This document shows, piece by piece, positions 882 through 51,824 of a stretch of DNA of 64,000 nt. Under the pieces are notes generated by a model that was not told the DNA's origin, did no database searches, and worked only from the letters and a program-made list of their open reading frames with translations. The stretch's first letter is position 1. Each line of letters starts with the position of its first letter. Source of the DNA: Heptranchias perlo (lineage: Eukaryota); contig NC_090340.1 in the NCBI RefSeq assembly GCF_035084215.1, positions 4,650,001 to 4,714,000 on the forward strand, read 5' to 3'. The position numbers and the translations under genes are program-made.

Positions 882-996
882 ACGATCATTCTGTCCTACC
901 CATCCACCTGATTTATCGATCTACAGTGGCGTTATTGGTCATTATTCTACTGACGATAATCATCCTCAACCATGTTACATCAGATAACTTTTAAAG
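882..996 (+). CDS. Transmembrane exon of upstream paralog (copy A) of the VJ-C1 Ig-superfamily receptor; in-frame TAA at 992-994
   Basis: Acceptor atatcttttccag| at 881/882, phase 1, reads (D)DHSVLPIHLIYRSTVALLVIILLTIIILNHVTSDNF*; donor AG|gtaaga at 996/997. Paralogous to 42475-42589. Confidence 0.75.
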
Positions 997-5368: not shown

Positions 5369-5759
5369 ATTCTTCTATTGTAAGGGCAGATAGAATACAT
5401 TTGTTCAACGCATCTGTCATTTCCTGATTCCCCAATATAATTTCTCCTGTCTCAGCCTCGAAGGGAATTCACGTTTACTTTCGCTCCTCTCTTCCTTTTT
5501 ACATACTTTACAAACAATCTGATTTAATCTGTCTATTTACTCCCTCATCCGTTTTTTTGACTTCCTTTGCTGGTTTCTAAATCGTTCCCAATCCTCAGGC
5601 TTACTACTCTTCTTGGTAAAATAATAAGCCTCTTATTTTAATCCAATACGACACTTAACATATTTAGTAAGCCAGGGATGGATCATTTTTACCGTCGAGA
5701 TTTTATTTCTGAATGAAAATTGTATTAGTAAAGAATTATGAAAGATTTATTGAAATGAT

Positions 5760-6995: not shown

Positions 6996-7994
6996 TGATC
7001 GACCTTCATATATGTTAACCGAATTTATCAATCAACCTTAGCCAACTCGCTAATCATACCTCTGTAATTGGCTTTGTTTAAGTTTAAAACTATAGTTTCT
7101 GACTAATTACGTCATTTTCGAACTCAATGTGAAATTCTATCACAGTATGATCACTCTTCCCCAGACGATCCCTTACTCTTTGATTCCGAATTAACCGTGT
7201 CTCATTGCAAAATATTACATCTAACATTACCTGTTGCCTGGTTCGTTCCACCACGTACTGTGCTACGAAACTGTCTCGAATGCATTCTATGAACTACAAT
7301 TAAAATCGGCCGACAAATTCTCGTCAAATTCATTGTCTCACCTGAATTCATCGAAGAGACAAGCTTTGTTATCGTTGTGATTATCGGTTATGCGCCATTT
7401 ATAACATTTAAAATTTCTCCATTACATTTCAGCCTCTAACTTATTCTTCGTTTTAAATAATTCTGCATTCAACCCATTCAAATGCCTCGATTAGATACTA
7501 ATTTGTAATGCACTTTTGGATGCACATTGTTCCTATCAACCCGATCAGCTACCACCAGACTCCCGGTGGTAGGTTCGGTGAAGTTGGGGGTGGGGTTGCA
7601 TATGCCAGAAAAATGGATAAATGTCCAATAGGATTATTTGCACCGTTTTTCTGCGATTTAAGCTGGTGTCCCGAGGTAAGGACTGGGGTGATTGGATTCT
7701 GATTGTGAAACCTTTCTAGACCTGACCACTCTGCAAGGGCTCTCCGCATGTCTGGCTTTAACCTCAGCAGGACACCAGGCGAAGCCCCAGGAGAAACAGT
7801 GTAAATGGTGGGAAGATAGATCGGGAAAGCGAGCGAACCCTGGCGCGATTTGAAGATCATAATTAAAAAGCACAGTTCATTGAATTTACAAAATGTAACT
7901 TCCATTAAAAGTTGAATTTAATCCTCAAACACTGCTTGAGCTTGTGCCAATTTGATGGTGTTCAATTGAAGCTCAACACAAGCTCGAAGAACAA

Positions 7995-10803: not shown

Positions 10804-10809
10804 ACAGCA

Positions 10810-26646: not shown

Positions 26647-28364
26647 TGCTGGCCCGGATTTTGTCCTTCAGCCTCAGCTGAAGGAGTGGGAGCTGTGTCA
26701 ATTGACGCCACTTGTTTACGTTGGCCCATAATGTTTCTGGTTGTCAGTAATTTATTCAATTTATCCTTGGTCCCTTGTCTCCAGTTTTCCGGAGTACCGA
26801 CATGGGGGAAGGGCTGGGCAGCAGTTCCTTCCCTGTATACAACCTCTGGCAAAATGTCCCATTTTGCCACAATTATAGCATTGTGGTCCCCTAATTTCCT
26901 GATCCTGGCCCTTGTGGTCCCCTATTTGCTGACCCTGACCTTTTGTTTGGTCCCAGTTATTCCTATACTTCTGAGGTCCCTCGTCCACTGACATTGGTTT
27001 TCCCGCAGTTCTCGAATGTTGCTGCCCTCCCTTTGGTCTGGTGATGTGTCCTTTTACATCACCCCAGGCCTCAATGGTGAGTCTCAAAATTTCGTCCCAC
27101 CTATCATTTTTACAGATAGATACTCCCAGTGCAGTTTCCATTAACGGCTGCAAATGACTTATTAACGTTTGTTTCAAGAACTTATAGTTTCGCCGATCAG
27201 GCAACACTTGGTTTGGTTGTACAATTGCTTGCTGACGTGGCACAATTGGTTGTGTCATCCAATACACATCAAGCAATCGACTGTTGAACGCGATCGCTTG
27301 CTCTGTCGGTCCCTGTACCGCGAGTGCACAAATGTGCATCAAATTTAAGGTGTTTATTCCCAATAAATCAAATATTCCTCCAAACAGCACATCGGACCTA
27401 TTTACTGCATAAGCGGCAGGGTAGTACATGGTTGTAAGCCCTCATCCAGGGCGGCAAACAAAATAGTTTTTAAATCACCGTCTTCCAGCTCTCCATGACC
27501 CCGTTTAAAATCTCCCCAAGCTCGAGAGAGCAGAGTAGGGTCATTTCCGTTAATGGGCCCGAATTATGTAGCCAAAGTAGCTGCTTCATCTCGTTTCTTG
27601 GGTTTACTGTCATTGTGTCTTGATGTAATCGCACCTTATTGATCATGGCTCACAATGGTGATGATCACATTTACGGGTTGGCTTCCCCAGGCATCGGTGT
27701 CGGTATTATTATTATATGCTGTTTCTCATTCTAACGGTTGCCAATATACTCCATCCCCTCCTCCGCCCGCCTTGTTAGCTGACACCAGGGTTGTTTGTTG
27801 TTCCAATTCTCCCTGTAGTTCATATATTTTTAACTCGAACTTGGTGTAATCTGCCTCGCGAGCAGGCCTATTCACCATTTTTCTAAGGGCTCCTCGCGCG
27901 TCTTTTCGTTGTGGGCTCAAAACATTGTTCTCTTGTCGCAATTCATTAATCTTCTACTTCACCTGCTGCGCTACTAACCCCTCTGCGGCTGCCTGAGCAG
28001 CTCCAGACTGTATTTGTGACAGAATACATGTCAGATCCCTATTCCATTCTCCAGTTCCTCACACTGTTTCTTCCCTTGTTTTAACTGTTTTGCACTCTAG
28101 GTCTTTCTTTTCCATCAATTCCACCTGCGGTTGTTCCCTTTCTTCCTGTTCTTTGTCTGTCTTTGCGAAGATTTGCTCTCTTCTGCGTGCACAGAAATGG
28201 GCTGCATGGACTACCAGTTGTAAGCCTATTTTTCTTTTCTTTTCATCTGTCTCCTCCTGAGTCCATTGCACGGTGCATTCAAATGTTCCGCCGTCTCCTG
28301 CCGTTGCACAGACCTTCTCTAACTGGTTCTGTAAGATCATTTCGGTCTCGGTTAACTCTGCCAC
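26643..28364 (-). pseudogene. gag: ERV gag relic with CCHC zinc knuckle
   Basis: ATG ORF shortly after the PBS (MAELTETEM...), coiled-coil-like N-terminal region, CYNCGKMGHFARGC at 26839-26880; several frameshifts. Confidence 0.85.
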
Positions 28365-33850: not shown

Positions 33851-34577
33851 CAATAGTTTATTCAGTGTTCGGGAGATCCGAACGACCTTATAGACCAAGC
33901 CTCAAGTCTTAGCGGGCTGATTCTCCAAGTGTGGGGAATCTCACACTAGAAAAGCTTGTCTCCAGCTATCTCTCGATTAAATTCGGAAATTGACTGACGA
34001 GCTGTGTTGCCACTTTAGCCATAACCTGACGTAACTGTAGCTGCAGAGTTCATAACAAAAGACCTAATTCCAATGGTCCAAAGACCGCTCACAAATTTGT
34101 AATAATAGCCCGAAGATAAATTTGAAACTCTACACATTTATTACATTTACATTCAATTACCTCCTCTTCCACAATCTATTCGTGCCATCAGGTCAGGTCA
34201 TTTTGACGCTATACAAGAATCGATGGGACATGTTTCTGACAAAATTTTATTTGATACACGAATGAACCCGATTGATGGAACCATTGGTCCTCAAGCGATC
34301 CTCTTCAGGTCAACTATGCAAACATTAAAGTGATTCTTCAGAATCAAAAACAGTAAAGACTTGGAATATTCGTCCATCGTGGCGGGCAAAAAGACGATGA
34401 ATTATGGACTTATGAGCTCATGTATAATATTAATAAACTCCCCCTACCTATGCTGCAACTACACTTTCTTATTTTCTGTTACCGTTTCTGGTCACAGCTA
34501 CACCCACAAATCTTACTCCAAAGGGCATGTTTTTCTCCACTTTACGCCACTGCGCAATTAAACAGTCATGTATCAAC

Positions 34578-35995
34578 TGACGTCACAGATAATTATTAAA
34601 TTATATTAAATACACAGCCGCCCATTCTCCGAAACTTCGTCCATTCGGTTCTCATTCACAAGGGTGATCTACGATACATTCAGTGCACGATATGTCGATG
34701 AGGGTGTCTCTTTGGAGCATTTGTTCCTTGGGAATTTTGATTCCAGGTAGACTTTTATTTTTGTTGTTATCAATCAATTTTTCCCGAACAAGAAACAGCA
34801 CATGAAGTCGATCGGATATTGTTTTGTGCTGGTTTAATTTGATATAATTGTTATCCTGTCCCTTGCCAGAGGGAAGCATCTAGTTGAGAAAGGCATGTTA
34901 CTTATGATCATTCAGCGAGGAAACCATTTCAACAGATGGATAATAATTCTCAGGTTTACGTACATTGAATTACGAATGCATCAATAGAGTGGATGGACGA
35001 TCTTATTTTAGCGGTTCAGATCATCTTCCCTGTATATGAATTATTTAACATTGTGGCTTCGTTTGTTGATAGTTGCTGTGCACACTTCAGGCAAATTGAT
35101 TCCGGATATTGTACAAAATAAGGCGCTTGAAGTGTCCTGTTCCCTTCGATCTCAATCATTCATTCATAAAGGTTCACTGGTGGAGAGAGGGCAACGGTAC
35201 CTTTCTGCAAAAAGAGAATAGAAAACAGTTCCAAATAAAGAAAGGCTGCGCCTATCTACAGTAATTTGGAATTTGACGTCACAGACAATTATGAAATTAT
35301 ATTAGATACACAGCCGCCCATTCTCAAAGACTTCACCCATTCGGTTCTCAGTCACAAAGGAAGATATACTGTACTTTCAATGCACGAAATGTCCATGAAT
35401 GTGGCACTTTGGTGCATTTGTTCCTTGGGCATTTTGTATCCAGGTAGACTTTTATTTTTGTTGTTATCAATCAATCTTTCCTGAAAAAGAAACAGCGCAT
35501 GAAGTCGGTATTATATTTGAGGTACAATTAGATATTGGTTTATGCTGGTTTAATTTGAAGTAATTTTTATCATGTCCCTTGCCGAAGGGAAACATCAAGT
35601 TGAGAAAGGTGATGTTATTTATGGTCATTCAATGAGGAAACAATTTCAACAGATGGAGAATAATTCTTAGAGTCAGGTACATTCAATTATTAATGTATCA
35701 ATGGATTGGATGGAAAATCTTATTTTGGTGCTTCAGATCATCTTCCCTGCATATGAATTATTTAATCGTGTGGCTTCTTTTGTACACAGTTACTGTGGAC
35801 ACTTCAGGCAAATTGGATCCGGATATTGTACAAAAGAAGGCGCTAAGAGGTTCGAACATAACCTTGAAATGTCCTTTTCCCTTCGATGTCAATCATTCAA
35901 ACATAAAGGTTCAATGGTGGAGAGAGGGCAACGCGACCTTGCTGCAAGAAGACAGTAGAAAACAGTTCCAAATAAAGAAAGGCCGCGCCTATCTT
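34578..35995 (+). repeat. ~700-bp local tandem duplication (34578-~35256 vs ~35275-35995) covering the V-exon 5' part and upstream intron
   Basis: Shared tgacgtcacaga, tacacagccgcccattctc, ccaggtagacttttatttttgttgttatcaatcaat, cacttcaggcaaattg and aaacagttccaaataaagaaaggc. Confidence 0.93.
35073..35256 (+). pseudogene. Truncated, frameshifted duplicate of the V exon
   Basis: VAVHTSGKLIPDIVQNKAL, then deletions relative to 35790-35995; ends before the DxGxYxC motif. Confidence 0.85.
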
Positions 35996-36101
35996 GATCT
36001 CCTGAATGTGACTGTCCTGGACAACGGGATGTATCATTGTGCAATTAAAAATCAGAAGGAAAGTTTTGGAAAAGTAACTCGTGTACAAGTTGTTGTATAT
36101 G
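35790..36101 (+). CDS. Ig V-set exon with germline-joined J-like motif (VJ) of an NKp30/antigen-receptor-like VJ-C1-TM gene; in-frame ATG at 35753 is an alternative start
   Basis: ITLKC...VQWWRE...LDLLNVTVLDNGMYHC...FGKVTRVQVVVY; acceptor cttcttttgtacacag| (phase 1); donor G|gtaagt at 36101/36102 (phase 1). Confidence 0.9.
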
Positions 36102-36968
36102 GTAAGTATGAGTGGAGCTGGAAACGTGAAGAGTTTAGTTGCTGTCGATGCTTAAAATGCGTTTGACATTAAAATCCAAGAAGGAAAAGCACTGTGTATA
36201 AAATAGTACAGCTTTCTACTTGTTCATAACGACACGCGTTCAACTATATGGAAACTTTCCCACTTCCAGAGTCTCTGCAAAATGTGACAACTGACCTATA
36301 TCTTCAATTGTTACTTAATGTTATGTTCATCAAGGGAAGTAAATTCAAGGCCGGGAACTAAAATGCTTCTTTCCAATTTTAGCACGAAGTATCCCTATGA
36401 AACACTTCGTGGTTATTTGCAATATTATAGATCTTTAAAGGTCCAGTGGAAAGAAGAGTTTCGAAGAGGAAGATCCCCATTCCCTCATTTAGACGGCGCA
36501 CTTCCCGCTTCTGCGATCCAGATAATATTACTGAATCGGTGGAACAGAGGAGACACACACGATAAATCAGGTGTCGTAGTCCAGACCGAGGTTTAAACTG
36601 GATCCTTTACGTACAAATGAAGGAAATGATCTCGATGTAACAACAGAACTCGTTCTGTACTATTTCAACTGTTTTCGCGCAGCATGGCCATTCGTACACC
36701 ATAATATGAATAAAAAGAGGTCCAACTTTGCAAATAAATGTTGTTGAATTCAACAGGGATACATCAGTATTGCTGGGGAGGAAATTGGGTAATAATACCT
36801 GTAGATACAGTGACAAAAATTAGGTTGAATTCTATTCAGGATAAATCATAATTACAGATACAACTACGATGCCAGATCACAAGCATTCGTTAATTAATGA
36901 AAACAGAGTGTAGATAAGAGTACAGGCCAAATATTTTGCTTTATCTCTTTTTGTTCTTTACCATTCAG

Positions 36969-37275
36969 CTGTTCCCGCTCCGCTGAAGATTGTCGCCAGA
37001 ACATCCGAAGGGGCTTCATCCGCTTTTCTGCGACTCGAGTGCAGAACGGCTGCTTTTTACCCGAAGGACTTCAACCTCATCTGGCAAAAAAAATGGTACC
37101 GAAATCGTGACTGGAGTTGGAACTGAAGAACAGGTAAACACAGAGGGACTGTATGAAGTTATTAGCTCCATAGAAGAGAAACGGCCAATCGAGCGCGGCA
37201 CAATTTACACCTGTCAAGTATATCACGTTTCAAACTCAATTCCAACAAATGACAGCTACACCGTTGGTAGCGATG
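36969..37275 (+). CDS. Ig C1-set exon of the same gene, with a +1 frameshift in an A8 run (37086-37093)
   Basis: Acceptor ttctttaccattcag|; AVPAPLKIVARTSEGASSAFLRLECRTAAFYPKDFNLIWQK, shift, NGTEIVTG...GLYEVISSI...YTCQVYHVS...GSD; donor G|gtaata. C1 signatures FYP, W..NG, YxCxVxH. Confidence 0.88.
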
Positions 37276-37727
37276 GTAATATTATTGCACAAGTCGTACT
37301 TGTATTGATTTCTGTGTTTCTTCGCGCAGTAATTGAGTTTCCATCGCAGAAAATGCGGGAAGTGTTTCCTGCAGTTGTTTGCATATCATTCTGTCACATC
37401 CGAAGTCTGGGTTTACTCCATCTCCCCTCAATCGGGTGAAGATTCCCTTTCTGTTGGTTATTGGGATATGATGAGAAATAATTTGGACACAAGCAACAGA
37501 GCCAATAGTGAACACCAGTCCTCAGCATAAGAACATAAGAACATAAGAAATTGGAGCAGGAGTAGGCCAATCGGCCCCTCGAGCCTGCTCCGCCATTCAA
37601 TAAGATCATGGCTGATCTGATCCCAACCACAAATCTAAAGAACACAAGAAGTCGGAGCAGGACCCGGCCACATAGCCCCTGGGCCCTCTCCGCCACCCAC
37701 AGGGCATTGACCGATCCGAACTCAGCT

Positions 37728-40583
37728 TCATGTCCAATTTCCTGCCCGCTCCCCATAACCCCTAATTCCCTTTACTTCTAGGAAACTGTCTATTTCTGTT
37801 TTAAATTTATCCAATGATGTAGCTTCCACAGCTTCCTGGGGCAGCAAATTCCACAGACCTACCACCCTCTGAGTGAAGAAGTTTCTCCTCATCTCAGTTT
37901 TGAAAGAGCAGCCCCTTATTCTAAGATTATGCCCCCTAGTTCTAGTTTCACCCATCTTTGGGAACATCCTTACTGCATCCACCCGATCAAGACCCTGCAC
38001 AATCTTATATGTTTCAATAAGATCGCCTCTCATTCTTCTGAACTCCAATGAGTAGAGTCCCAATCTACTCAACCTCTCCTCATATGTCCGCCCCCTCATC
38101 CCCGGGATTAACCGAGTGAACCTTCTTTGTACTGCCTCGAGAGCAAGTATGTCTTTTCTTAAGTATGGAGACCAAAACTGTATGCAGTATTCCAGGTGCG
38201 GTCTCACCAATACCTTATATAACTGCAGCAATACCTCCTTGTTTTTATATTCTATCCCCCTAGCAATAAAAGCCAACATTCCGTTGGCTTTCTTGATCAC
38301 CTGCTGCACCTGCATACCAACTTTTTGATTTTCTTGCACTAGGACCCCCAGATCCCTTTGTACTGCAGTACTTTCCAGTCTCTCGCCATTAAGAAAATAA
38401 CTTGCTCTCTGATTTTTCCTGCCAAAGTGCATAACCTCACATTTTCCAATATTATATTGCATCTGCCAAATCTCCGCCCACTCACCCAGCCTGTCTATAT
38501 CCCCTTGCAGATTTTTTATGTCCTCCTCACTCTCTACTTTCCCTCCCATCTTTGTATCATCTGCAAATTTTGATATGTTGCACTCGGTCCCCTCCTCCAA
38601 ATCTTTAATATAGATTGTAAAGAGTTGGGGACCCAGCACCGACCCCTGTGGAACACCACTGGTTACTGGTTGCCAGTCCGAAAATGAACCATTTATCCCA
38701 ACTCTCTGCTTCCTGTTTGATAACCAATCCTCCACCCATGCCAGAATATTACCCCCAATCCCGTGATTTTTTATCTTAAGTAATAATCTTTTATGTGGCA
38801 CCTTGTCGAATGCCTTCTGGAAGTCCAAATACACTACGTCCACTGGTTCCCCTTTATCCACCCTATACGTTATATCCTCGAAGAACTCAAGCAAATTTGT
38901 CAGACATGACTTCCCCTTCATAAAGCCATGCTGACTTTGTCCTATTAAATTATGCTTATCTAAATGTTCCGTTACTGTCTCCTTAATAATAGACTCCAAA
39001 ATTTTACCCACCACAGATGTTAAGCTAACTGGCCTATAATTTCCAGCCTTCTGCCTACTACCCTTTTTAAATAACGGTGTTACATTAGCAGTTTTCCAAT
39101 CTGCCGGGACCTCTCCTGAGTCCAGGGAATTTTGGAAAACTATCACCAAAGCATCCACAATCCCTACTGCCACTTCCCTCAAGACCCTAGGATGGAAGCC
39201 ATCAGGTCCAGGGGATTTATCCGCCTTGAGTACCATTATTTTACTGAGTACCATCTCTTGAGTGATTTTAATCGTATTTAGCTCCTCCCCCCCGAGAGTC
39301 CCCTGTTTGTCCAGTGTTGGGATATTCTTAGTGTCCTCTACTGTAAAGACTGAAACAAAATATTTGTTCAGCATTTTTGCCATCTCCATGTTTCCCACCA
39401 TTAATTTCCCGGTCTCATCCTCTAAGGGACCTATGTTTGCCTTAGCCACCCTTTTTCTTTTTATATAACTATAGAAACTCTTGCTATCTGTTTTTATATT
39501 TTTTGCTAATTTCTTTTCATAATCTAACTTCCCTTTCTTAATCAATCCTTTCGTTACTTTTTGCTGTCTTTTGAAGAATTCCCAATCTTCTATCCTCCCA
39601 CTAAGTTTGGCTACCTTATATGTCCTTGTTTTTAGTCGGATACTATCCTTGATTTCTTTACTTAGCCACGGGTGGCTGTCATTTCTTTTACACCCTTTTT
39701 TCCTCAGTGGAATATATTTATTTTGAAAGTTGTAAAATAACTCCCTAAATGAACACCACTGATCATGTACCGTCTTACCCTTTAATCTATTTTCCCAGTC
39801 CACTTTAATCAATTCCGCTCTCATACCATCATAGTCTCCTTTATTCAAGCTCAGTACGCTTGTTTGAGAATCAACCTTCTCACCCTCTAATTGGATATGG
39901 AATTCAACCATGTTGTGGTCGCTCGTTCCAAGGGGATCCTTAACTAGGACATTATTAATTAATCCTGACTCATTACACAGGACCAGGTCCAAGGTTGCCT
40001 GCCCCCTTGTAGGATCAGTTACATACTGCTCAAGAAATCCATCCCTGATGCACTCAATGAACTCGTCCTCAAGGCTGCTCTGCCCAATTTGATTTGTCCA
40101 GTTAATATGATAATTAAAATCCCCCATAATTATGGCTGTTCCCTTATTACATGCCCCGACTATCTCCTGATTAATACTTCTTCCAGCAGAGTTGCAACTA
40201 TTAGGAGGCCTATATACTACGCCCACTAATGTTTTTTTTCCCTTATTATTCCTTATCTCCACCCAAACTGTTTCATTATCTTGATGCTTTGTCCCAATAT
40301 CATTTCTCTGTATTACAGTGATTCCTTCCTTTATTAACATAGCCACCCCACCTCCCCTTCCTTCCTGCCTGTCCTTCCTGATTGTTAAATACCCTGGCAT
40401 ATTTAATTCCCAGTCGTTGTCACCCTGCAGCCATGTTTCTGTAATGGCCACAAGATCATACCCATACGTAGTTATTTGTGCCGTTAACTCGTCCATTTTA
40501 TTACGAATGCTACGTGCATTCAGATAAAGAACTTTCAAATCTGTTTTGTGACGCTTAGTTCCTGCTTTTTCCTTTTTTAACAC
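37728..40583 (-). CDS. Intact CR1 ORF2 (APE endonuclease + reverse transcriptase), 951 aa
   Basis: LYLNARSI, ITETW, YRPP, GDFN, SDH; NYRPVSLTS, QHGF, DFQKAFD, GVPQGSVLGP, FADD; no stops. Confidence 0.96.
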   Translation of the reverse strand: MLKKEKAGTKRHKTDLKVLYLNARSIRNKMDELTAQITTYGYDLVAITETWLQGDNDWELNMPGYLTIRKDRQEGRGGGVAMLIKEGITVIQRNDIGTKHQDNETVWVEIRNNKGKKTLVGVVYRPPNSCNSAGRSINQEIVGACNKGTAIIMGDFNYHINWTNQIGQSSLEDEFIECIRDGFLEQYVTDPTRGQATLDLVLCNESGLINNVLVKDPLGTSDHNMVEFHIQLEGEKVDSQTSVLSLNKGDYDGMRAELIKVDWENRLKGKTVHDQWCSFRELFYNFQNKYIPLRKKGCKRNDSHPWLSKEIKDSIRLKTRTYKVAKLSGRIEDWEFFKRQQKVTKGLIKKGKLDYEKKLAKNIKTDSKSFYSYIKRKRVAKANIGPLEDETGKLMVGNMEMAKMLNKYFVSVFTVEDTKNIPTLDKQGTLGGEELNTIKITQEMVLSKIMVLKADKSPGPDGFHPRVLREVAVGIVDALVIVFQNSLDSGEVPADWKTANVTPLFKKGSRQKAGNYRPVSLTSVVGKILESIIKETVTEHLDKHNLIGQSQHGFMKGKSCLTNLLEFFEDITYRVDKGEPVDVVYLDFQKAFDKVPHKRLLLKIKNHGIGGNILAWVEDWLSNRKQRVGINGSFSDWQPVTSGVPQGSVLGPQLFTIYIKDLEEGTECNISKFADDTKMGGKVESEEDIKNLQGDIDRLGEWAEIWQMQYNIGKCEVMHFGRKNQRASYFLNGERLESTAVQRDLGVLVQENQKVGMQVQQVIKKANGMLAFIARGIEYKNKEVLLQLYKVLVRPHLEYCIQFWSPYLRKDILALEAVQRRFTRLIPGMRGRTYEERLSRLGLYSLEFRRMRGDLIETYKIVQGLDRVDAVRMFPKMGETRTRGHNLRIRGCSFKTEMRRNFFTQRVVGLWNLLPQEAVEATSLDKFKTEIDSFLEVKGIRGYGERAGNWT

Positions 40584-40666
40584 TTTACCTATTACTCCAT
40601 ACCTTCTGTCCCTTCCTGTTACGCTTTCCTCTCTCTCCCTGCTCAGGTTCCCAACCCCCTGCCACT

Positions 40667-40957
40667 TTAGTTTAAACCCTCCCCAACAGCACTAGCAAAC
40701 ACTCCTCCTAGGACAGCGGTCCCGGCCCTGCCCAGGTGCAGACCGTCCGGTTTGTACTGGTCCCACCTCCCCCAGAACCGTTTCCAGTGTCCCAGGAATT
40801 TGAATCCCTCCCCCTTGCACCATTCCTCTAGCCACGTATTCATTTGAAATATCCTCCTATTTCTACTCTGACTAGCACGTGGCACTGGCAGCAATCCTGA
40901 GATTACTACCTTTGAGGTCCTATTTTTTAATTTACCTCCTAACTCCCTAATTTCCAT
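40667..40957 (-). CDS. CR1 ORF1 C-terminal fragment (SGNH esterase-like)
   Basis: VVISGLLPVPR...MNTWLEEWC...YKPDGLHL (DxxH motif) directly upstream of ORF2. Confidence 0.85.
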   Translation of the reverse strand: MEIRELGGKLKNRTSKVVISGLLPVPRASQSRNRRIFQMNTWLEEWCKGEGFKFLGHWKRFWGRWDQYKPDGLHLGRAGTAVLGGVFASAVGEGLN

Positions 40958-42474
40958 AATTCATGCGAACTGGCAAATAATATTGCAAGTTCACTGAGAG
41001 GGCACGGTGAGGGGTGATGCCGGAAAACGAACCATGCGTCATTGGGATTGGAATAGTTAGTGAGGGTTGACGGCGTGGACTGGGGGAATTGATTTCTTTC
41101 ACGTTCCCGCAGCCATGTCGCAATCCAAGGTCATTCCCGCATCATCAGATTCACAGTGCGGAGCCGTTGACAATGCACCAAGTATGGAATACTTAGGTTG
41201 CTCTTGTGGAAAGATGGAAAAAAGTTTTCGTGAGCATTTGCTCCGAATGGCAATTCTAGCGCATTTGTAAATACGCCCCATTGTCTTTAAGAGTTCGCCC
41301 TAAATAAGCAATTGTTATTTAATGTTATGTTTATCAAGGAAAGCGGTATGAAGGGAACGTGGCAGTGGAAGGGTGAATAGGTCGGAGTTGGTCGAGCAGC
41401 AAGTGGGTAGGTGAAGCATGAATAATTGCGGAGAGAATGGGAAAGCAGCCACTTAAGGCAAGTGTTTCCCTGCAATATTACCTAAAATATAGGCTGCAGC
41501 CATTAGTTAGTCATTTCTCTTTTACAACACACTGTGCCAATCGTCACCTACCGTTCGCGCAATAATGCAGAGAAGATAGCAAAAGAGGTTAGAAAGAGAA
41601 ACAAAGAGAACTTAGGGGCAGGTAGCAAAAGAGGAAAGAGAACGATTCAGAAATAAAAGAGGGGAGAAAGAGAGAGAAACAACAATGACAAGAGAACTGA
41701 CAGGGATAAGGGAGAGACGACGACCTTGAAATGACATGGCGTACAAGTGATCTAGCGTCAGAATTCGGATGCGAGCCCAGCGAAAACCCCAAGAAACTAA
41801 CACGCCTGAACATGCAGACACGAGAATGATCGCCTAGAATTCTCCGGCTGGATATCGGCCAATGCAGCGGAGAATCATCATAAGCGTTAGGAAGGAGATC
41901 AGTGGAACGAGCGTAAATTCGTCCCTAATTGTAGACGTTCAGCAGAAAATGTAAAATAGGACAACGTCAACCCACGGCAGTCGACACAGCTGGAATGTTA
42001 GTCGGTGAAGGATCTGCCAGGAAATGCAAGACTTTTACGGTTTTACAATCAGGAAACACGACGTCTAACATCAGTATTCGCAAATTTAAGATTTATCGAA
42101 CGTGTGTCACGAAGTATGCACGGATCCCTCCTCGCTCAAGTACGTGAAGATGTCTCATGCTCATTGTTTCTAGCGACATTTAAAATCATTTCTTTTAGAA
42201 TGTATTTATATTATTGCGAGAAACAACGGACAGAGAAAATCTTCACCAAAGCATTGACGATATCACGACACACGGCCAGCAATGGAATTCTTATTCCAGT
42301 AGATTGTATAACTTCAAATGATTTTCTGTGGTTTTGTTATATAAAAAAAGAAAGATAATGGGACAAGCATGAAGTGGATAATGTTTGATTCCGTGGCATA
42401 GTCAGAAATATCATCAGATTGACATGGTTTCTGGTTTTGAGTGTGTATCATTGACCAATTTATAGCTTTTCCAG

Positions 42475-42611
42475 ACGATCATTCTGTCCTACCCGTCCAC
42501 CAGATTTATCGATCTACAGTGGGGTTACTGGTCATTATTCTACTGACGATAATCATCCTCAACCATGTTACATCAGATAACTTTAAAAGGGAAGAGATTA
42601 TTCAATCTTAA
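42475..42611 (+). CDS. Transmembrane exon of the VJ-C1 gene (copy B); donor GT>GG, read-through stop at 42609-42611
   Basis: Acceptor gcttttccag|, phase 1 matching the C1 donor: (D)DHSVLPVHQIYRSTVGLLVIILLTIIILNHVTSDNFKREEIIQS*. Confidence 0.75.
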
Positions 42612-42779
42612 ACAACATTATTCAATTTATAACATGGAAGAAATATGTGATATTTCGTAATCAATTGTAGAGATTTCTACTCAATAAATACAAAATAATG
42701 AAATGCCTGAAACCATGAAAACCAATAGGAAGTCGTATCAGGGCCGTTGTTTAATGTTGGCTTTAGAAAATAAGTTAAA

Positions 42780-44700
42780 ATAAGAAATAGGAGCAAGAGT
42801 AGGCCATCCAGATCATGGCTGATCTTCTACCTCCACTTTCCCAGCCTATCCCCATATCCCTTGATTATCTTAGAGTACCAAAACCTATCGATCTCAGTCA
42901 GAATATACTCAACGACTGAGCATCCACAGCCCACTGGGGTAGAGAATTCCAAAGATTTGCAGCCCACTGTGTGAAGAAATTTCTCCTCATATTAGTCCTA
43001 AATGATCGATCCCTTATCCTGAGAATATGCCCCCTAGGTCTAGACTGTCCACCCAGTAGAAGCAGCCTCTCAGCATCTACCGTGTCAAACCCACTCAGAT
43101 TCGAATATGTTTCAATGAGATCAAACATCATTCTCAAAACTCCAGGAAAACCCATTCTGCTCAATCTCTCCTTATGCACCAATCCTCTCATCCCAGGAAT
43201 CAATCCCGTTAACCTTCGTTGAAACACATCTGAGGCAATTGTATCCTTCCTTAGGTAAGGAGGCCAAAACTGTACACATTACACCAGGTGTGGTCTCACC
43301 AAAGCCCTGTACAATTGCAGCAAGACTTTCTAACTCTTGTACTCCAACCCCCTTGCAATAAAGGTCAACATGTCATTTGCCTTCCTAATTGCTTGCTGTG
43401 ACTTCCTGTGTTTCGTGTACAAGGACGCTGAAATCCCTCTGAACACCAACATTTAATAGTTTTTCACCGTTTACAAAATGTTAAGCTTTTCTATTCTTCC
43501 TACCAAAGTGAATAACTTCACATTTCACCACATTATACTCCATCTGCCAACTTCTTGCCCACGAACTTAACCTGCCTTTATCCCCTTGCAGTCCCTTTCC
43601 CACCTAGCTTTGTATCGTTAGCGCAATTGGATACATAACACTGGATCCTTTCGTCTAAATAATTAATATGGATTTTAAATAGCTGCGGCCCAAGCACTGA
43701 TCCATGCGGCTCCCCAGTAGTTGCAGCCTGCCAACCTGAAAATGGCCTATATATTCCTCGTCACTGTTTTCTGTCCGTGAACCAATCCTCAATTCCTGCT
43801 AATTTATTACGCCAACCCCATGGGCCTTTAACTTGTGTAAAAATCTTTTGTGTGACACGTTATCGAATGGCTTTTGAAATTTCAAATATACTACATCCTC
43901 TGGTTCCCCTTTCTCTACCGTGCTAGTTCGATCATCATCAAACAATAATAGAGTTGTCAAACACGATTCCCCTTTCATAAAACCATGTTTACTCTGCCTA
44001 ATCATATTATGTTTTGCTAAGTGCCACCTTACCGCGTCCTTAATAATAGATTCCAGCACTTTCAGGACGACTGATGTCGTACTAACTGGACTGTGGTTCC
44101 CTGCTTTCTCTCTCCCTGATTTCCTGAATAGCTCTGTAACGTTTGCTACCTCCCAATCCACTGGGACAGTTCTAGAATCTAGGGAACTTTGGAAGATCAC
44201 AACCAATGCATGCACTATCTCTGCAGCCACCTCTTTTAGAACCCTAGGATGCAGGTCAGCAGGCCCAGGGGATTTTTTGGTTTTTAGTCCCTTAATTGCT
44301 TCATTACTTTTTCTTTACTAATATTAATTAATTTAAGCTCCTCACTCTCATTGAACCCTGGGTTCCCCATTATTTCTGGTGTGTTTTTTTATTCTTCTAT
44401 TGTAAGGGCAGATGGAATATATTTGTTCAACGCATCTGTCATTTCCTGATTCCCCAATATAATTTCTCCTGTCTCAGCCTCGAAGGGAATTCACGTTTAC
44501 TTTCGCTCCTCTCTTCCTTTTTACATACTTTACAAACAATCTGATTTAATCTGTCTATTTTCTCCCTCTTCCGTTTTTTTGACTTCCTTTGCTGGTTTCT
44601 AAATCGTTCCTAATCCCCAGGCTTACTGCTCTTCTTGGTAAAATAATAAGCCTCTTCTTGTAATCCAATACGACACTTATCCTATATAGTAAGCCAGGGA
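42780..44700 (-). mobile_element. Old CR1 fragment (copy B of 1185-5700, uninterrupted)
   Basis: Same degenerate ORF2 peptides as copy A. Confidence 0.85.
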
Positions 44701-44769
44701 TGGATCATTTTTACCGTCGAGTTTTTATTTCTGAATGAAAATTGTATTAGTAAAGAATTATGAAAGATT

Positions 44770-46020
44770 TATTGAAATGATTTTGAGTATTTAACTGGTC
44801 GAATAGACAAGGGAGAACCAGTGCTTGTGGTTTATTTAGATTTTCAGAAGGTCTTTGATAAAGTCCCACATAAGAGGTTAGTGTGCAAATTTAAAGTGCA
44901 TGGGATTGGTGGTAATTTACTGGCATGGATTGAAAATTGGTTCACAGACAGGAAACAGAGAGTAGGAATAATTGGATCTTTTTCGGGGTGGCAGGCAGTG
45001 ACTAGTGAGGTACCGCAGGGATTAGTGCTGGGGCCCCAGCTATTCACAATATATATCAATGATTTGGATGAGGGAACTAAATGTAATATTTCCAAGTTTG
45101 CTAACGACACAAAACTAGGTGGGATAGTGAGTTGAGAGGAGTATGAAAAGAGGCTTCATTGCGATTTAGACAAGTTGAGTGAGTGGGCAAATACATGGAG
45201 GATGCAGTCTAATGTGGATAAATGTGAAGTTATCCACTTCGGAAGGAAAAACAGAAAGGCAGAGTATTATTTAAATGTTGATAGATTGGGGAATGTTGTT
45301 TTACAAAGGAACCTGGGTGCCCTTGTACACCAGTCATTGAAAGCAAACATGCAGGTGCAGCAAGCAGTTAGGCAGGCAAATGGTATGTTGGCCTTCATTG
45401 CAAAACGATTTGAGTGTATGTGCAAGGATGTCTTACTGCTGTTATACAGGGCCTTGGTGTGTCCACACCTGGATTATTGTGTGCAGTTTTGGTCTCCTTA
45501 CCTCAGAAAGCATATGCTTGCCACAGATGGAGTACAGTGAATGTTCACCAGACTGATCGGTAGGATGGCAGGACTGTCGTATGAGGAGAGATTGGGTAGA
45601 TTTGGCCTGTATTGACTCGAATTTCGAAGAATGAGAGGATATCTCATTGAAACACGTAAAATTCTGACAGGGCTAGACAGAGTGGACGCAAGGAGGATGT
45701 TTCCCCTGTTCGAGGTGGGGGGTGTCCAGAACGAGGGGTCACAGTCTCAGAATACGGGGTCGGACATTTAGGATTGAGGTGAGGATAAATTTATTCTCTC
45801 AGAGGCTGGTGAACCTGTGGAATTCTGGACCATAGAAGGCTGTGGAGGCCAAGTCACTGAATATATTTAAGAAGGAGCCAGATAGAATTCTCGAAACAAA
45901 AAGCTTCAAGGGATATGGGGAGAGAGCGGGATAGACGATCAGCCAAGACCATATTAAATGGCAGAGCAGGCTCAAAGGGCCGAATGGCCTACTCCTGATC
46001 CTATGTTCTATGTTTCTATG
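44770..46020 (+). mobile_element. Degraded CR1 fragment (copy B of 5760-6995)
   Basis: [31 protein letters not shown]. Confidence 0.88.
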
Positions 46021-47024
46021 TTCATGATCGACCTTCATATATGTTAACCGAATTTATCAATCAACCTTAGCCAACTCGATAATCATACCTCTGTAATTGG
46101 CTATGTTTAAGTTTAAAACTATAGTTTCTGACTAAGTACGTCATTTTCGAACTCAATGTGAAATTCTATCACAGTATGATCACTCTTCCCCAGACGATCC
46201 CTTACTCTTTGATTCCGAATTAATCGTGTCTCATTGCAAAATATTACATCTAACATTACCTGTTGCCTGGTTCGTTCCACCACGTACTGTGCTACGAAAC
46301 TGTCTCGAATGCATTCCATGAACTACAATTAAAATCGGCCGACAAATTCTCGTCAAATTCATTGTCTCACCTAAATTCATCGAAGAGACAAGCTTTGTTA
46401 TCGTTGTGATTATCGGTTATGCGCCATTTATAACATTTAAAATTTCTCCATTACCTTTCAGCCTCTAACTTATTCTTCGTTTTAAATAATTCTGCATTCA
46501 ACCCATTCAAATGCCTCGATTAGATACTAATTTGTAATGCACTTTTGGATGCACGTTGTTCCTATTAACCCGCTCAGCTACCACCAGACTCCCGGTGGTA
46601 GGTTCGGTGAAGTTGGGGGTGGGGTTGCATATGCCAGAAAAATGGATAAATGTCCAATAGAATTATTTGCACCGTTTGTCTGCGATTTAAGCTGGTGTCC
46701 CGAGGTAAGGACTGGGGTGATTGGATTCTGATTGTGAAACCTTTCAAGACCTGAGCACTCTGCAAGGGCTCTCCGCATATCTGGCTTTGACCTCAGCAGG
46801 ACACCAGGCGAAGCCCCAAGAGAAACAGTGTGAATGATGGGAAGATAGATCGGGAAAGCGAGCGAACCCTGGCGCGATTTGAAGATTATAATTAAAAAGC
46901 ACAGTTCATTGAATTTCCAAAATGTAACTTCCATTAAAAGTTGAATTTATTCCTCAAACACTACTTGAGCTTGTGCCAATTTGATGGTGTTCAATTGAAG
47001 CTCATCACAAGCTCGAAGAAAAAA

Positions 47025-49405
47025 ATGTATATACTTCAATGCACGAAATCTAGTGAATAAGGCAGATGAGCTGAGGGCAAAGATAGATACGTGGAAGTAT
47101 GATATCATAGCTAATACTGAAGTGTGATATCATAGCTATTGTGGCTTAAAGATTGACTGGAATGGCAGCTCAACATTCCTGCTTACAGGGTATTCAGTCG
47201 AGATAGGGAGTGAGATGAAATAGGATGTGGGTGGCAATGTTGGTTAAAGAAACAATTACAGTCGTGTGGTGGCATTATTTATGAGAAGGATCATCAAATG
47301 AGGCCATATGGATTGAGCTCAAGAACAAATAAGGGGCAATCACTCTGCTGGAAGTGGTGTCAACCAGTAAAGGGATATTGGAGAGCAACTATTTAGGTAA
47401 ATTTCTGAGACGCGCAAAAACAATAGGGTAGTAATAGTAAGGGATTTCAACTACCATAATATTAACTGGGATAGAATCAGTGTAAAAAGCATAGAGGGCG
47501 CAGAATTCTTGAAATTAATTCAGGAGAACATTTTCAGGCAGTACATAGCAAGCTCAACTGGAGAGAGAGAGCAACTCTGGACTTAGTTTTAGGGAATGAA
47601 GATGGGCAGGTGGAAGAAGTATCAGCGGGAGAGAATTTTGGCGGTAGTTATCATAATTCAGTTGGATTTAGAGCAGTTAGAGTAGAGTAACTAAGGAAAA
47701 AGTAGGGCCTATTAGAGACCAAAAAGGTAACGTCTGCGTGGCGGAAGAAGATGAGTATGATTGTGAATGAATACTTTGCGCATGTCTTTACAAAAGAGGG
47801 GGACATTGTATTTAAGGAGGAGGAGTTCGAAATATTGGATGGGATAAACATAGTGAGGGAGGAAGTATTCAGGGGATGAGCATCTTTGAATATAGATGAA
47901 TCGCTAGCCCCGGACGAAAAGTATCCCAGGCTGTTAGTAGAAGCAAGGGAAGATATAGTGGATGCTCTGACCATCAGTTCCCAATCCTCTCTGGCAACAG
48001 GTGCGTGCCAGAGGACTGCTAGCGTTGTGCCACTGTTTAAAAAGAGAGAAAGGAATAGACCGAGTAATTATAGGCCAGTCAGCCTAACCTCGGTGGTGGC
48101 CAAATTATTGGAAACAAATATGAGTGACAGTATAAATCGTCATTTAGAAAGGCAGGGATTAATGAAGGACAGTCTGCAGGTATTTGTTTCGTGAAGGTCG
48201 TATTGACCAACTTGATTGCATTTTTTGAGGAGATAACGAGGAGGGTCGATGAGGGTAGCTCGTTAGATGTCGTCTACATAGCAAGGCTTTTGACACGGTC
48301 CCACATGGCAGACGGGTCAGAAAATTAAAAGCACATGGGATCCAAGGGAGTGTGGCAAGTTGAATCCAAAATTGGCTCTGTGGAATGAAGCAAAGGGGAA
48401 TGGTCGATGGGTGTTTTTGTGACTGGAAGGCTGTTACCACCGCGATTGCGCAGGGCACAGTACCAGGTCCCTTGCTTTTTGTGGTATTTATCAATTATTT
48501 GTACCAAAATGTAGACTGCATGAGTAAGTAGTTGGCAGATGATACAAAAATCGGTTGTGTGGTTGATAGTGAGGAGAACAGCTGTAGACTGCAGCAGAAA
48601 AGTGGCAAATGGAATTCAATCTGGAGAAGTGTGAGGTAATTCATTTTTGGGAGGGCAAACAAGGCAAGAGAATACACAATAAATGGAAGGATACTGAGAG
48701 GTGTAGAGGAACAGATGGACCTCGGAGTGCACATCTACAGATCCCAGAAAGTAGCAGGACAGGGAGATAAAGCGGTTAAGAATGCCTACGGGATACTTTC
48801 CTTCATTAGCCAAGGTATAGAATATAAGAATAAGGAGGTTCTGCTTGAACTGTAGAAAACATTAATTAGGCTAGAGCGTGACAGGATTTCCTGACAGGAA
48901 AGATGTGATTGCACTAGATAGGGTACAGAGCAGATTTACGAGGATGTTGCAAGGACCGGAGAATTTTAAGTATGAAGTAAGATTGGTTAGGCTGGGGTTG
49001 TTTTCTTTGGGACAGAAGAGGCTCAGGAGAGATTTAATTGAGGTGTATAAAATTATGAGGGGCCTGGATAGAGTGGATAGGAAGGACATGTTTGCCTTAG
49101 CAGATGGGTCAATAACCAGGGGGCATAGATTTAAATAATTGCTAGAAAGATTAGAGGGGAGCTGAGGAAACATTTTTCATCCAGAAGGTGGTAGGGGTCC
49201 GAAGCTCATTTGCTCAAACGGTCATAGAGGCAGGAAACCTCTTCGCATTTAAAGGGTGATTGAATGTGCACTTGAAGTGTCGTAACCTACAGGCCAAGGA
49301 CGAAGAGCTGGGAAGAGTCATTCGGCTGGATTGTTGCTTTTTCGGCCGGCACAGACGTGATGGACCGAATGGCCTCCTCCTGCACCATAATATCTATGAT
49401 TCTAT
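47025..49405 (+). mobile_element. Degraded CR1 (copy B of 7995-10803, with internal deletion)
   Basis: Colinear with copy A; NYRPVSLTSVV. Confidence 0.87.
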
Positions 49406-49409
49406 GAAC

Positions 49410-51822: not shown

Positions 51823-51824
51823 TA

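What the first reader, a model, noticed from the sequence alone, without database searches (positions are those of the whole stretch)
35753..42611. Non-rearranging antigen-receptor-like gene: joined VJ exon + C1 exon + Arg-containing TM exon
Seen: three + strand exons joined by phase-compatible (phase 1) GT-AG introns. They encode a V-set domain ending in a J-like strand (FGKVTRVQV, one base from FGKGT) with no intervening RSS, a C1-set domain (FYP, W..NG, YTCQVYH) and a TM segment with an Arg near its N-terminal side (IYRSTVGLLVIILLTIIIL). The TM exon lies beyond a 3.4-kb LINE and is absent from the ORF track. Established: C1 domains are largely confined to Ig/TCR/MHC/B2M/tapasin/B7/SIRP-type proteins; single-exon VJ domains occur in NKp30 (NCR3); TM Arg residues mediate pairing with FcRgamma/CD3zeta in activating receptors. 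Inference: an NKp30-related or 'pre-RAG' VJ-C1 receptor family, possibly uncharacterised in this lineage.
Basis: partly seen in the sequence, partly recalled or inferred. Interest (0 to 1): 0.85.

Follow-up and report, generated by a model that had tools for sequence, protein, structure and literature searches.

The report
Shark SIRP-like receptor gene copy
This is one copy, carrying a one-base frameshift in the assembly, of a large shark and ray family of non-rearranging immune receptors built like a single T-cell-receptor chain; the family is unstudied, but this scan had already met it elsewhere in the same genome.

Summary
The three + strand exons are real. They are leader+V 35753-36101, C1 36969-37275 and TM/short tail 42475-42611, with GT-AG phase-1 introns. 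A 3.4-kb antisense LINE lies in intron 2.

The exons are colinear with annotated 261-aa proteins of the shark Heptranchias perlo (V 62-65%, C1 77%, TM 81% identity).

The gene belongs to a family found only in sharks, rays and chimaeras in my searches. Its layout is V(J-type G strand)-C1-TM. Members have either long ITIM-like tails or short tails with a TM arginine. Databases give it only inconsistent automatic names.

The nearest solved relative of the closest homolog is human SIRPalpha. NKp30 never appeared in the match lists shown.

This copy is atypical in two ways:
- It has lost three of the four J-motif residues.
- Its C1 exon has an extra A (A8). Most DNA contig depth shows one A fewer.

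One low-depth RNA-like contig joins an internal donor in the C1 exon to the predicted TM acceptor, out of frame.

The gene is one unit of a tandem array with a period of about 39-42 kb.

This scan noted the same family before on other DNA of this genome (s1-882560, s1-882814, s1-883179, s1-883506). Verdict: a new member of a known kind, of moderate interest.

The parts
882..994 (+). TM/short-tail exon of the preceding tandem unit. It encodes the same IYRS...NHV segment and stops 8 codons earlier than the exon at 42475.
   Evidence: tblastn within the window: 89% over 47 aa. Exact start and stop. The 1-2785 block matches 41611-44388 at 95.8%.
35036..35258 (+). Truncated, frameshifted copy of the leader and first two thirds of the V exon (pseudo-exon). 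It is part of a local duplication, 34815-35257 versus 35531-35994.
   Evidence: tblastn pieces of 73% and 77% identity in two frames. blastn 82.8% over 464 nt. Translations.
35753..36101 (+). Exon with ATG, a hydrophobic leader (MNYLIVWLLLYTVTV) and the V domain with its G strand. It ends in phase 1 before GTAAGT.
   Evidence: Pfam V-set E 8.9e-10. 64.8% identity to P0162 over 108 aa. Lies in a 13-row clade with SH-aLRT 99.
36969..37275 (+). C1-set exon, 307 nt as assembled. It is in frame only with one A fewer.
   Evidence: The two pieces match P0161 at 76.9% and 77.4%, abutting at residue 163. C1-set E 0.0018 for the second piece.
37086..37093 (+). Run of 8 A that shifts the frame. A TGA follows at 37123-37125 in the shifted frame.
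   Evidence: In DNA contigs 'left out 1' at 37086 carries 75 of 92.2 (X1) and 89.5 of 96.7 (X3) of summed depth.
37133..37134 (+). Internal GT (GTAAAC) in the C1 exon, used as a donor in the one RNA-like contig seen.
   Evidence: X5 record 17 lies on 37087-37133, then runs on for 118 letters. The first 30 of these equal window 42475-42504.
37520..40960 (-). LINE in intron 2 (limits approximate). Its open 951-aa ORF2 lies at 37728-40583.
   Evidence: ORF. Pfam RVT_1 8.2e-31 and Exo_endo_phos 8.3e-14. Related copies elsewhere in the window.
42475..42611 (+). Terminal exon: connecting peptide, TM helix with Arg near its outer end, N-H at its inner end, short tail, TAA.
   Evidence: 80.6% identity to P0161 residues 225-260. 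Acceptor used in the X5 contig.
42683..42688 (+). AATAAA, 72 nt after the stop codon.

Best explanation
The locus is one unit of a tandem array (period about 39-42 kb) of activating-type members of a chondrichthyan multigene family of non-rearranging V(J)-C1-TM immunoglobulin-superfamily receptors. The family's nearest characterised relatives are the SIRPs.

Shown:
- the exon structure;
- colinearity with annotated shark proteins;
- placement in a well supported subfamily that holds both ITIM-tailed and short-tailed, Arg-TM members;
- V-set and C1-set domains in all 50 relatives scanned.

Inferred mechanism: the two-domain ectodomain binds an unknown ligand. Short-tailed members such as this one signal by pairing their TM arginine with an acidic TM residue of an ITAM adaptor of the FcRgamma / CD3zeta / DAP12 kind. 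Their ITIM-tailed siblings with near-identical ectodomains recruit SH2 phosphatases. Together they form a paired activating/inhibitory system.

This particular copy, as assembled, cannot make the protein, because an extra A in the C1 exon leads to a stop 10 codons later. It has also lost the J-type glycines. I read it as a recently disabled or decaying copy beside intact siblings. An assembly slip or an allele is the live alternative.
For: - Exons and splice signals.
- Colinear matches of the four exon pieces to P0161 and P0162 (Heptranchias perlo, 261 aa): V 62.5-64.8%, C1 76.9% and 77.4%, TM 80.6%.
- An exhaustive HMMER search with the V exon found single-stretch matches at 50-62% identity to 292-412-aa shark proteins.
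- The family profile found 56 proteins at E<=1e-8. Of these, 55 carry names of sharks, rays or Callorhinchus and 1 has no name.
- 50 of 50 relatives match both Pfam C1-set and V-set.
- V tree: the window falls in a 13-row clade (SH-aLRT 99). By my reading of the TM and tail strings, 7 of its proteins are short-tailed with Arg in the TM and 4 have tails with 1-4 ITIM-like motifs.
- The window keeps 43 of 48 positions conserved at 80% or more in the family.
- P0161's best solved relative is SIRPalpha, 2wng, E 6.7e-13, aligned from FR3 through the G strand into C1.
- Tandem repeat blocks at 93-96% identity.
- The A7 form dominates the DNA contigs, and one RNA-like contig uses the TM acceptor.
Against: - No canonical V-C1 or C1-TM junction was seen in RNA. 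X6 gave nothing. X5 gave one 168-nt contig at depth 2.4, with a non-canonical, out-of-frame junction.
- The reads do not settle A8 against A7. Contigs of paralogous units were laid too (90% threshold), and the sample differs from the window by about 1% (my estimate from the word share).
- Adaptor pairing and ligand are pure inference. The Arg sits only about 3 residues into the hydrophobic stretch and could be juxtamembrane.
- SIRP orthology is not shown. SIRPs have two C1 domains and a TM Lys. The structural search ties B7-H6, MHC II, Ig, UrIg2 and SIRPgamma within 2 Z units.
- It is not resolved whether a further upstream leader exon exists.
Confidence: 0.75

Rival explanations
1. The gene is intact and functional in the animal. 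On this view the eighth A is a homopolymer error of the assembly, or a rare allele, and this unit encodes a working activating receptor.
For: - One A fewer is shown by contigs carrying 75 of 92.2 (X1) and 89.5 of 96.7 (X3) of the summed depth at 37086.
- The X5 contig starts its match at 37087 with 3 unmatched letters before it, as expected if it had 7 As. This is my reading of table 8.
- Apart from the A-run, no stop or lost cysteine or tryptophan occurs in any exon.
Against: - The contigs with 7 As may come from sibling units.
- X1 keeps 17.2 of 92.2 depth without the deletion.
- The copy has lost G114, G116 and L119 of the family motif.
- The only RNA-like junction seen is aberrant.
Confidence: 0.4
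2. One reading: the gene is an NKp30 (NCR3)-related gene, or a direct relic of the pre-RAG antigen-receptor precursor.
For: - V and J-type strand lie in a single exon with no RSS, followed by C1 and a TM Arg.
- The family profile matches Ig chains and shark UrIg2 (9dmx, E 1.8e-28) as strongly as SIRPalpha.
- The passages I read in PMC10751288 and section 7 of PMC12227049 treat non-rearranging VJ-C1 genes as remnants of such precursors.
Against: - NKp30 has no C1 domain and was not among the 60 matches shown.
- UrIg and UrIg2 have many C domains (section 7 of PMC12227049).
- Earlier notes of this scan put the MHC on other pieces of this genome (unchecked).
- Multi-C-domain targets inflate whole-protein scores.
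Confidence: 0.1
3. The family consists of B7/butyrophilin-type ligands (V-C, membrane-bound counter-receptors), not receptors.
For: - The best structural match of the P0161 model is B7-H6 (Z 14.9, rmsd 3.2, 182 aligned over both domains). ICOS-L, PD-L2, BTN and B7-H3 are close behind.
- The V exon alone hits VTCN1, PD-L1 and SKINT1 V domains.
- 10 of 56 relatives are auto-named NCR3LG1-like.
Against: - Z values are tied with many other IgSF chains.
- 50 of 50 members match Pfam C1-set, against 10 of 50 for the CD80-like C2-set model.
- Pairing of ITIM-like tails with Arg-TM short tails is a receptor signature.
- The sequence search puts SIRPalpha first.
Confidence: 0.1

Closest known systems
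SIRP family (SIRPalpha / SIRPbeta1 / SIRPgamma)
   Same: - N-terminal V-type domain with a GxG G strand running straight into a C1-set domain.
- Paired members: ITIM-like tails versus short tails with a basic TM residue.
- SIRPalpha is the best solved relative of the closest homolog P0161 (E 6.7e-13), and SIRPgamma is 4th.
- 17 of 56 relatives are auto-named PTPNS1-like or SIRPbeta1-like.
   Different: - One C1 domain, not two.
- Arg near the outer end of the TM, where SIRPbeta1 has a Lys (the latter recalled).
- A short V with about 56 residues between the cysteines and no C'' strand in the model.
- Orthology, CD47 binding and synteny are untested.
- A passage of PMC13262535 dates the SIRP family to Tetrapoda.
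NKp30 (NCR3)
   Same: Non-rearranging single-exon V with a J-type strand, and a TM Arg for adaptor pairing (the NKp30 properties are recalled).
   Different: NKp30 has no C domain. It was not among the matches shown. Shark NCR3 genes are cited as MHC-linked VJ genes in section 7 of PMC12227049, while this locus has no MHC gene within the window.
UrIg / UrIg2 (shark non-rearranging Ig-like genes)
   Same: Single-exon VJ plus C1-type domains, found in cartilaginous fish. The UrIg2 structure 9dmx matches the family profile at E 1.8e-28 and the model at Z 13.4.
   Different: UrIg2 has 9-11 C domains and is a single gene near the Ig/TCR loci (section 7 of PMC12227049). Here there is one C1, a TM Arg or ITIM tails, and a large multigene family.
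Ig light chain / TCR chain
   Same: V-J-C1 order and lengths. Fab light chains fill the Foldseek list (E about 2e-14). The profile aligns from FR3 through J into the lambda constant domain.
   Different: V and J are contiguous in the germline with no RSS. Two-domain rmsd to Fab and TCR chains is 9-13 A, against 3.2 A for B7-H6, so the predicted domain arrangement differs.
B7-H6 / B7-butyrophilin ligands
   Same: Best two-domain structural superposition. Weak V-exon sequence hits to VTCN1, PD-L1 and SKINT1.
   Different: The second domain is clear C1-set in all members, and the tails are receptor-type and paired.

Membership tests
Unnamed chondrichthyan V(J)-C1-TM family (auto-named SIRPalpha-like, NCR3LG1-like, tapasin-related-like and others) | Colinear V, C1 and TM similarity to annotated members | tested here: met
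   V 64.8%, C1 76.9% and 77.4%, TM 80.6% to P0161/P0162. 13-row clade with SH-aLRT 99.
Unnamed chondrichthyan V(J)-C1-TM family (auto-named SIRPalpha-like, NCR3LG1-like, tapasin-related-like and others) | Family-conserved residues, including the GxGxxLxV G strand | tested here: inconclusive
   43 of 48 positions conserved at 80% or more are kept. Three of the 5 lost are G114, G116 and L119 of the J-type motif.
Unnamed chondrichthyan V(J)-C1-TM family (auto-named SIRPalpha-like, NCR3LG1-like, tapasin-related-like and others) | Open reading frame through all exons | tested here: not met
   A8 run at 37086-37093 shifts the frame in the assembly. The reads mostly show one A fewer but cannot be assigned to this unit.
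SIRP family | V domain followed by two C1-set domains | tested here: not met
   Only one C1 exon lies between V and TM here. The aligned relatives go from one C1 domain straight to the TM. One search shows C1-set in all 50 members but does not count domains.
SIRP family | Paired inhibitory (ITIM) and activating (basic TM residue, short tail) members | tested here: met
   Met at family level. The window copy is the short-tail, Arg-TM type.
SIRP family | Closest sequence relationship to SIRPs | tested here: inconclusive
   SIRPalpha is first for P0161 (51.7 bits), but an Ig chain is within 0.5 bit. With the profile, Ig and UrIg2 score higher. No tree with SIRPs could be built.
SIRP family | CD47 binding; synteny with the SIRP cluster | not testable with these tools
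NKp30 (NCR3) | Single V domain with no C domain | tested here: not met
   A C1 exon follows the V exon.
NKp30 (NCR3) | MHC linkage | not tested
   No MHC gene in the window. Earlier unchecked notes place MHC genes on other pieces of the genome.
Rearranging antigen receptors (Ig/TCR) | V and J segments separated in the germline and flanked by RSS | tested here: not met
   The G strand is contiguous with V in one exon, with no heptamer inside the exon.
UrIg / UrIg2 | VJ exon followed by many C1-type domains | tested here: not met
   One C1 exon only. Compare section 7 of PMC12227049.

The most novel reading that the evidence does not exclude
The family is the cartilaginous-fish counterpart, or sister lineage, of the SIRPs. 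That would put a SIRP-type paired activating/inhibitory VJ-C1 receptor system in the ancestor of jawed vertebrates, not at the origin of tetrapods. Its one-C1, Arg-TM members would then be the closest living non-rearranging analogues of a single T-cell-receptor chain, V-J-C-TM with a basic TM residue for adaptor assembly. Such genes are what an antigen-receptor precursor is thought to have looked like.
Probability: 0.3. Interest if true: 0.6.

Novelty: new member of a known kind. Interest (0 to 1): 0.4.

Why it matters
Non-rearranging VJ-C1 genes are the candidates discussed as relatives of the gene that the RAG transposon invaded (PMC12227049, abstract and section 7; PMC10751288, passages).

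A large, fast-duplicating, paired activating/inhibitory VJ-C1 family in sharks, rays and chimaeras is annotated under at least eight unrelated automatic names. It therefore deserves a proper description.

This window adds two things: an activating-type unit in a young tandem array, and an example of decay, with the J motif lost and a possible frameshift. It does not reveal a new kind of system, and the scan had already met the family on other DNA of this genome.

Tried and rejected
Steps that led nowhere or were limited:

1. The exhaustive HMMER search with the V exon was dominated by giant multi-Ig proteins. Only the single-stretch hits were useful.
2. The PDB search with the V exon alone gave I-set proteins (titin, CEA, contactins) and weak B7-type V hits. 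It is not diagnostic of family.
3. The Foldseek PDB list was filled by Fab light chains, with TM-scores of only 0.32-0.34. The VIA wide search tied many IgSF chains within 2 Z units. Structure therefore confirms V+C1 but does not choose a family.
4. RNA evidence was thin. The three RNA-like runs hold next to none of the words. Of the two laid, one gave nothing and one gave a single aberrant junction.
The question of a split or unsplit leader, and synteny, stay open.
6. I considered a separate upstream leader exon and found no convincing one by eye in 33.5-35.7 kb. tblastn cannot see so short an exon.
7. The isolated heptamer at 36190 in intron 1 has no coding segment beside it. I rejected it as chance.
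9. Eight answered paper searches found no description of this family. One search was badly designed: shark terms alone satisfied it. Subscription journals are mostly not held. The UrIg paper PMC10530332 is not held. Supplements are closed, so the figures and tables S of PMC12227049 and PMC10751288, which may list other VJ-C1 genes, were not seen.

Every search used single exon pieces. The natural homolog P0161 stood in for the whole protein.

Full report
**What is in the sequence.**

The three + strand exons exist.

- Exon 1 runs from an ATG at 35753 to 36101. It encodes a hydrophobic leader (MNYLIVWLLLYTVTV) and then a V-type domain with the canonical Cys, Trp and D-x-G-x-Y-x-C. It ends in phase 1 before GTAAGT.
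- Exon 2 (36969-37275) follows a pyrimidine-rich acceptor. It encodes a C1-type domain (LECRTAAFYP ... W ... YTCQVYH) and ends in phase 1 before GTAATA.
- Exon 3 (42475-42611) encodes DDHSVLPVHQIYRSTVGLLVIILLTIIILNHVTSDNFKREEIIQS and a stop. AATAAA follows 72 nt later.

Intron 2 holds a LINE with an open 951-aa endonuclease/reverse-transcriptase ORF on the minus strand.

The C1 exon is 307 nt as assembled. A run of 8 As (37086-37093) shifts the frame, and a TGA follows at 37123. I did not correct this and did not join the exons. All searches used exon pieces.

**Chance or real.**

- Pfam gives V-set E 8.9e-10 (39 bits, cut-off 26) for exon 1.
- For the second C1 piece alone, C1-set gives E 0.0018 (19 bits, just under the cut-off of 21).
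- The 41-aa first C1 piece and the TM piece match nothing significant.
- Against the PDB, the second C1 piece finds Ig light-chain constant domains first (8.3e-4). MHC class II beta, TAPBPR and B7-H6 follow weakly.

**The family.**

An exhaustive HMMER search with the V exon found 534 proteins at E<=0.001. Most are giant multi-Ig proteins. The single-stretch matches over the whole exon were 292-412-aa proteins at 50-62% identity. Their sequences show leader-V-C1-TM.

They come from Heterodontus francisci, Chiloscyllium punctatum, Scyliorhinus canicula, Carcharodon carcharias, Callorhinchus milii, Heptranchias perlo and Mobula.

Two more searches added relatives. With the profile, 56 proteins passed E<=1e-8. 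Of these, 55 are named for sharks, rays or Callorhinchus and one has no name. Only the 8000 candidates sharing most words were scored, and only lengths of 143-457 aa were eligible. Absence of bony-vertebrate hits is therefore not proof.

By my count the automatic names of the 56 are:

| Automatic name | Count |
|---|---|
| PTPNS1 (SIRPalpha)-like | 16 |
| SIRPbeta1-like | 1 |
| NCR3LG1-like | 10 |
| tapasin-related-like | 5 |
| MHC class II-like | 5 |
| Ig lambda-like | 3 |
| TCR beta-like | 2 |
| PD-L1-like | 1 |
| CDON-like | 1 |
| uncharacterised or unnamed | 12 |

All 50 relatives that I aligned match both Pfam C1-set and V-set.

**Colinearity.**

The exon pieces match two 261-aa Heptranchias perlo proteins end to end:

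| Window piece | Identity | Residues matched in the homolog |
|---|---|---|
| Leader+V, residues 9-116 | 64.8% | P0162 15-122 |
| First C1 piece | 76.9% | P0161 125-163 |
| Second C1 piece | 77.4% | P0161 163-224 |
| TM piece | 80.6% | P0161 225-260 |

The two C1 pieces abut at residue 163. The lesion is therefore a single extra base with nothing lost. This supports the join of the three exons without my making it.

No protein near 100% identity was found. The window's species is thus not among those annotated in the libraries searched. The nearest hits being from Heptranchias is all I can say about its position.

**Paired forms.**

The alignment shows two kinds of C-terminus on similar ectodomains.

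- Long tails carry repeats such as LTYAAL, VYAQT and VYAEV.
- Short tails have an Arg two to four residues into the hydrophobic segment (IYRS, IVRG, IPRL, THRF) and a D/E/N-H pair at its inner end.

In the V tree (51 rows, quick IQ-TREE, SH-aLRT only) the window falls in a 13-row clade with support 99. Its nearest row is P0162, at 66% over 104 columns. Of the other 12 rows:

- 7 are short-tailed with the Arg (P0161, P0162, P0160, P0023, P0164, P0165, P0166).
- 4 have tails with 1-4 ITIM-like motifs (P0012, P0163, P0170, P0171).
- 1 is a truncated model (P0013).

These counts are my reading. The script misplaced the TM window for P0165 and P0166, so I read those two from the alignment. The window copy is of the short-tailed Arg type.

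**The J-type strand.**

In the 50-protein alignment the G strand carries G114 (88%), G116 (86%), L119 (80%) and V121 (92%). This is GxGxxLxV, the signature of J segments.

The window keeps 43 of the 48 positions conserved at 80% or more. Three of the five it has lost are G114 (now V), G116 (now R) and L119 (now V).

So the family has a J-type strand, but this copy is the poorer example.

No heptamer lies within the exon. One CACTGTG at 36190 in intron 1 stands alone.

**Nearest known relatives.**

- P0161 against the PDB puts human SIRPalpha first (2wng, E 6.7e-13, 51.7 bits). The alignment runs from the E-F region of V through the G strand into the first C1 domain, with a second weaker match to the next C1.
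- An Ig chain follows within 0.5 bit. SIRPgamma is 4th, UrIg2 7th and B7-H6 60th.
- The 15-protein profile ranks an Ig chain (8.5e-29) and UrIg2 9dmx (1.8e-28) above SIRPalpha (1.1e-22). Those targets have more C domains, which raises the score.
- NKp30 was in none of the 60-row lists shown.

An AlphaFold2 model of P0161, built with the 50-row alignment, has mean pLDDT 84.4 and pTM 0.67. It shows two beta-sandwich domains and a helix at 232-260 that begins about 5 residues before the Arg. Only a one-residue bridge lies between strands C and D, so the V domain is short and lacks a C'' strand. This fits the 56 residues between its cysteines.

Foldseek lists Fab light chains. The wide VIA search gives B7-H6 first (Z 14.9, rmsd 3.2 A, 182 residues). 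MHC II, Ig, ICOS-L, PD-L2, butyrophilins, UrIg2 (13.4), SIRPgamma (13.2) and TCR lie within 2 Z units of it. Either way structure does not pick a family.

**Genomic setting.**

Blocks 1-2785, 5368-8657 and 9086-17162 repeat at 41611-44388, 44390-47678 and 47688-55786, with 95.8, 96.0 and 93.2% identity.

The TM exon of the preceding unit lies at 882-994. It stops 8 codons earlier, as the Heptranchias proteins do.

The gene is therefore one unit of a young tandem array with a period of about 39-42 kb.

A truncated, frameshifted copy of the leader and first two thirds of V lies about 700 bp upstream. It is part of a local duplication at 82.8% identity.

tblastn of all stored relatives found no other family exon in the window. 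The rest is LINE and retroelement debris.

**Reads.**

Four DNA-like runs of one sample hold 0.71-0.72 of the stretch's words. Three RNA-like runs of the same sample hold next to none. All are contigs.

I laid 33900-37450 at 90% likeness.

- At 37086, contigs with one letter fewer carry 75 of 92.2 (X1, 2 contigs) and 89.5 of 96.7 (X3, 3 contigs) of the summed depth.
- At 90%, contigs of sibling units are laid too.
- At several places (for example 37128 and 37135 in X3, and 37270 in both runs) the window's own letter is not seen at all.

The result therefore shows that forms with 7 As exist and dominate. It does not show what this unit carries.

X6 gave nothing. X5 gave one 168-nt contig at depth 2.4. 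It lies on 37087-37133 and then runs on for 118 letters. The first 30 of these equal window 42475-42504, and they differ at 2 of 30 from the preceding unit's exon (my comparison).

This is a spliced record that uses the predicted TM acceptor of this unit or of an allele. Its donor, however, is an internal GTAAAC at 37134, which skips the last 142 nt of the C1 exon. With 7 As it is out of frame. With 8 As a stop precedes it.

So the TM exon is confirmed as an exon spliced to the C1 exon. The canonical transcript was not seen.

**How it most likely works.**

Shown: the architecture and family, and the paired tails within the subfamily.

Inferred from established knowledge of paired receptors (SIRPalpha/beta, KIR, NKp30/NKp46, FcalphaRI, GPVI; recalled, not tested):

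- Short-tailed members assemble through the TM Arg with an ITAM adaptor that has a TM Asp.
- An Arg near the outer end points to the FcRgamma / CD3zeta type more than to DAP12.
- ITIM-tailed siblings recruit SHP phosphatases.

The ligand is unknown.

For this copy I estimate about 0.55 that it is disabled and about 0.4 that it is intact in the animal.

**Comparison and novelty.**

It works like a SIRP-type paired receptor, and its layout is that of a single antigen-receptor chain.

It is not a SIRP by architecture, since it has one C1. It is not an NKp30, since it has a C1. It is not a UrIg, since it has only one C1 and belongs to a multigene family.

I found no paper on the family. What I read:
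- PMC12227049: outline, section 7 and passages.
- PMC10751288: passages.
- PMC13262535: passages.

Supplements were closed and most subscription journals are not held.

Earlier notes of this scan describe the same family on other DNA of this genome:
- the preceding unit (s1-883506);
- a cluster 122 kb downstream (s1-882814);
- clusters 10.4 and 10.6 Mb away (s1-883179, s1-882560). The last has a follow-up that reached the same 'SIRP-like VJ-C1' reading.

This finding is therefore a further member, of moderate interest.

Noticed in passing
window 37728-40583 (-): The LINE in intron 2 keeps an uninterrupted 951-aa ORF2 with endonuclease and reverse-transcriptase domains, so it may be a young insertion. 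Related but broken copies lie at about 1.3-4.2, 13.7-14.6, 43-44.3 and 52.3-53.3 kb.
   Followed up: partly
window 35701-35790 (+), other frame: A second open frame starting at ATG 35701 ends in ...LFNRV just upstream of the V exon. The leader of the Heptranchias protein P0161 ends IFNRV-TVD. Removing 19 nt from the window would give NRVTVD, the matching end of that leader. P0162 instead follows the frame used here. This suggests an indel difference in the leader region between paralogs. The true start and leader structure are unresolved.
   Followed up: no
window 42559-42564 and relatives (alignment A1): Short-tailed members share an acidic or amide residue plus His at the inner end of the TM helix (NH here; DH and EH in others). 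ITIM-tailed members lack it. This is a second conserved polar feature with no explanation so far.
   Followed up: no
window 25216-27429 (-): Broken retrovirus-like element: a gag-type zinc knuckle ORF and reverse-transcriptase fragments in separate ORFs.
   Followed up: partly
window 35094/35825: One DNA contig (X3, depth 10) joins 35094 to 35825 with 13 other letters between. It bridges the truncated V copy and the full V exon. It may be a sibling unit without the local duplication, or an alignment artefact.
   Followed up: no
protein P0161 (Heptranchias perlo): The closest annotated homolog has Tyr in place of the second canonical cysteine of the V domain, which is conserved in 98% of relatives. 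Decay or relaxed constraint may therefore be common among activating-type copies.
   Followed up: no
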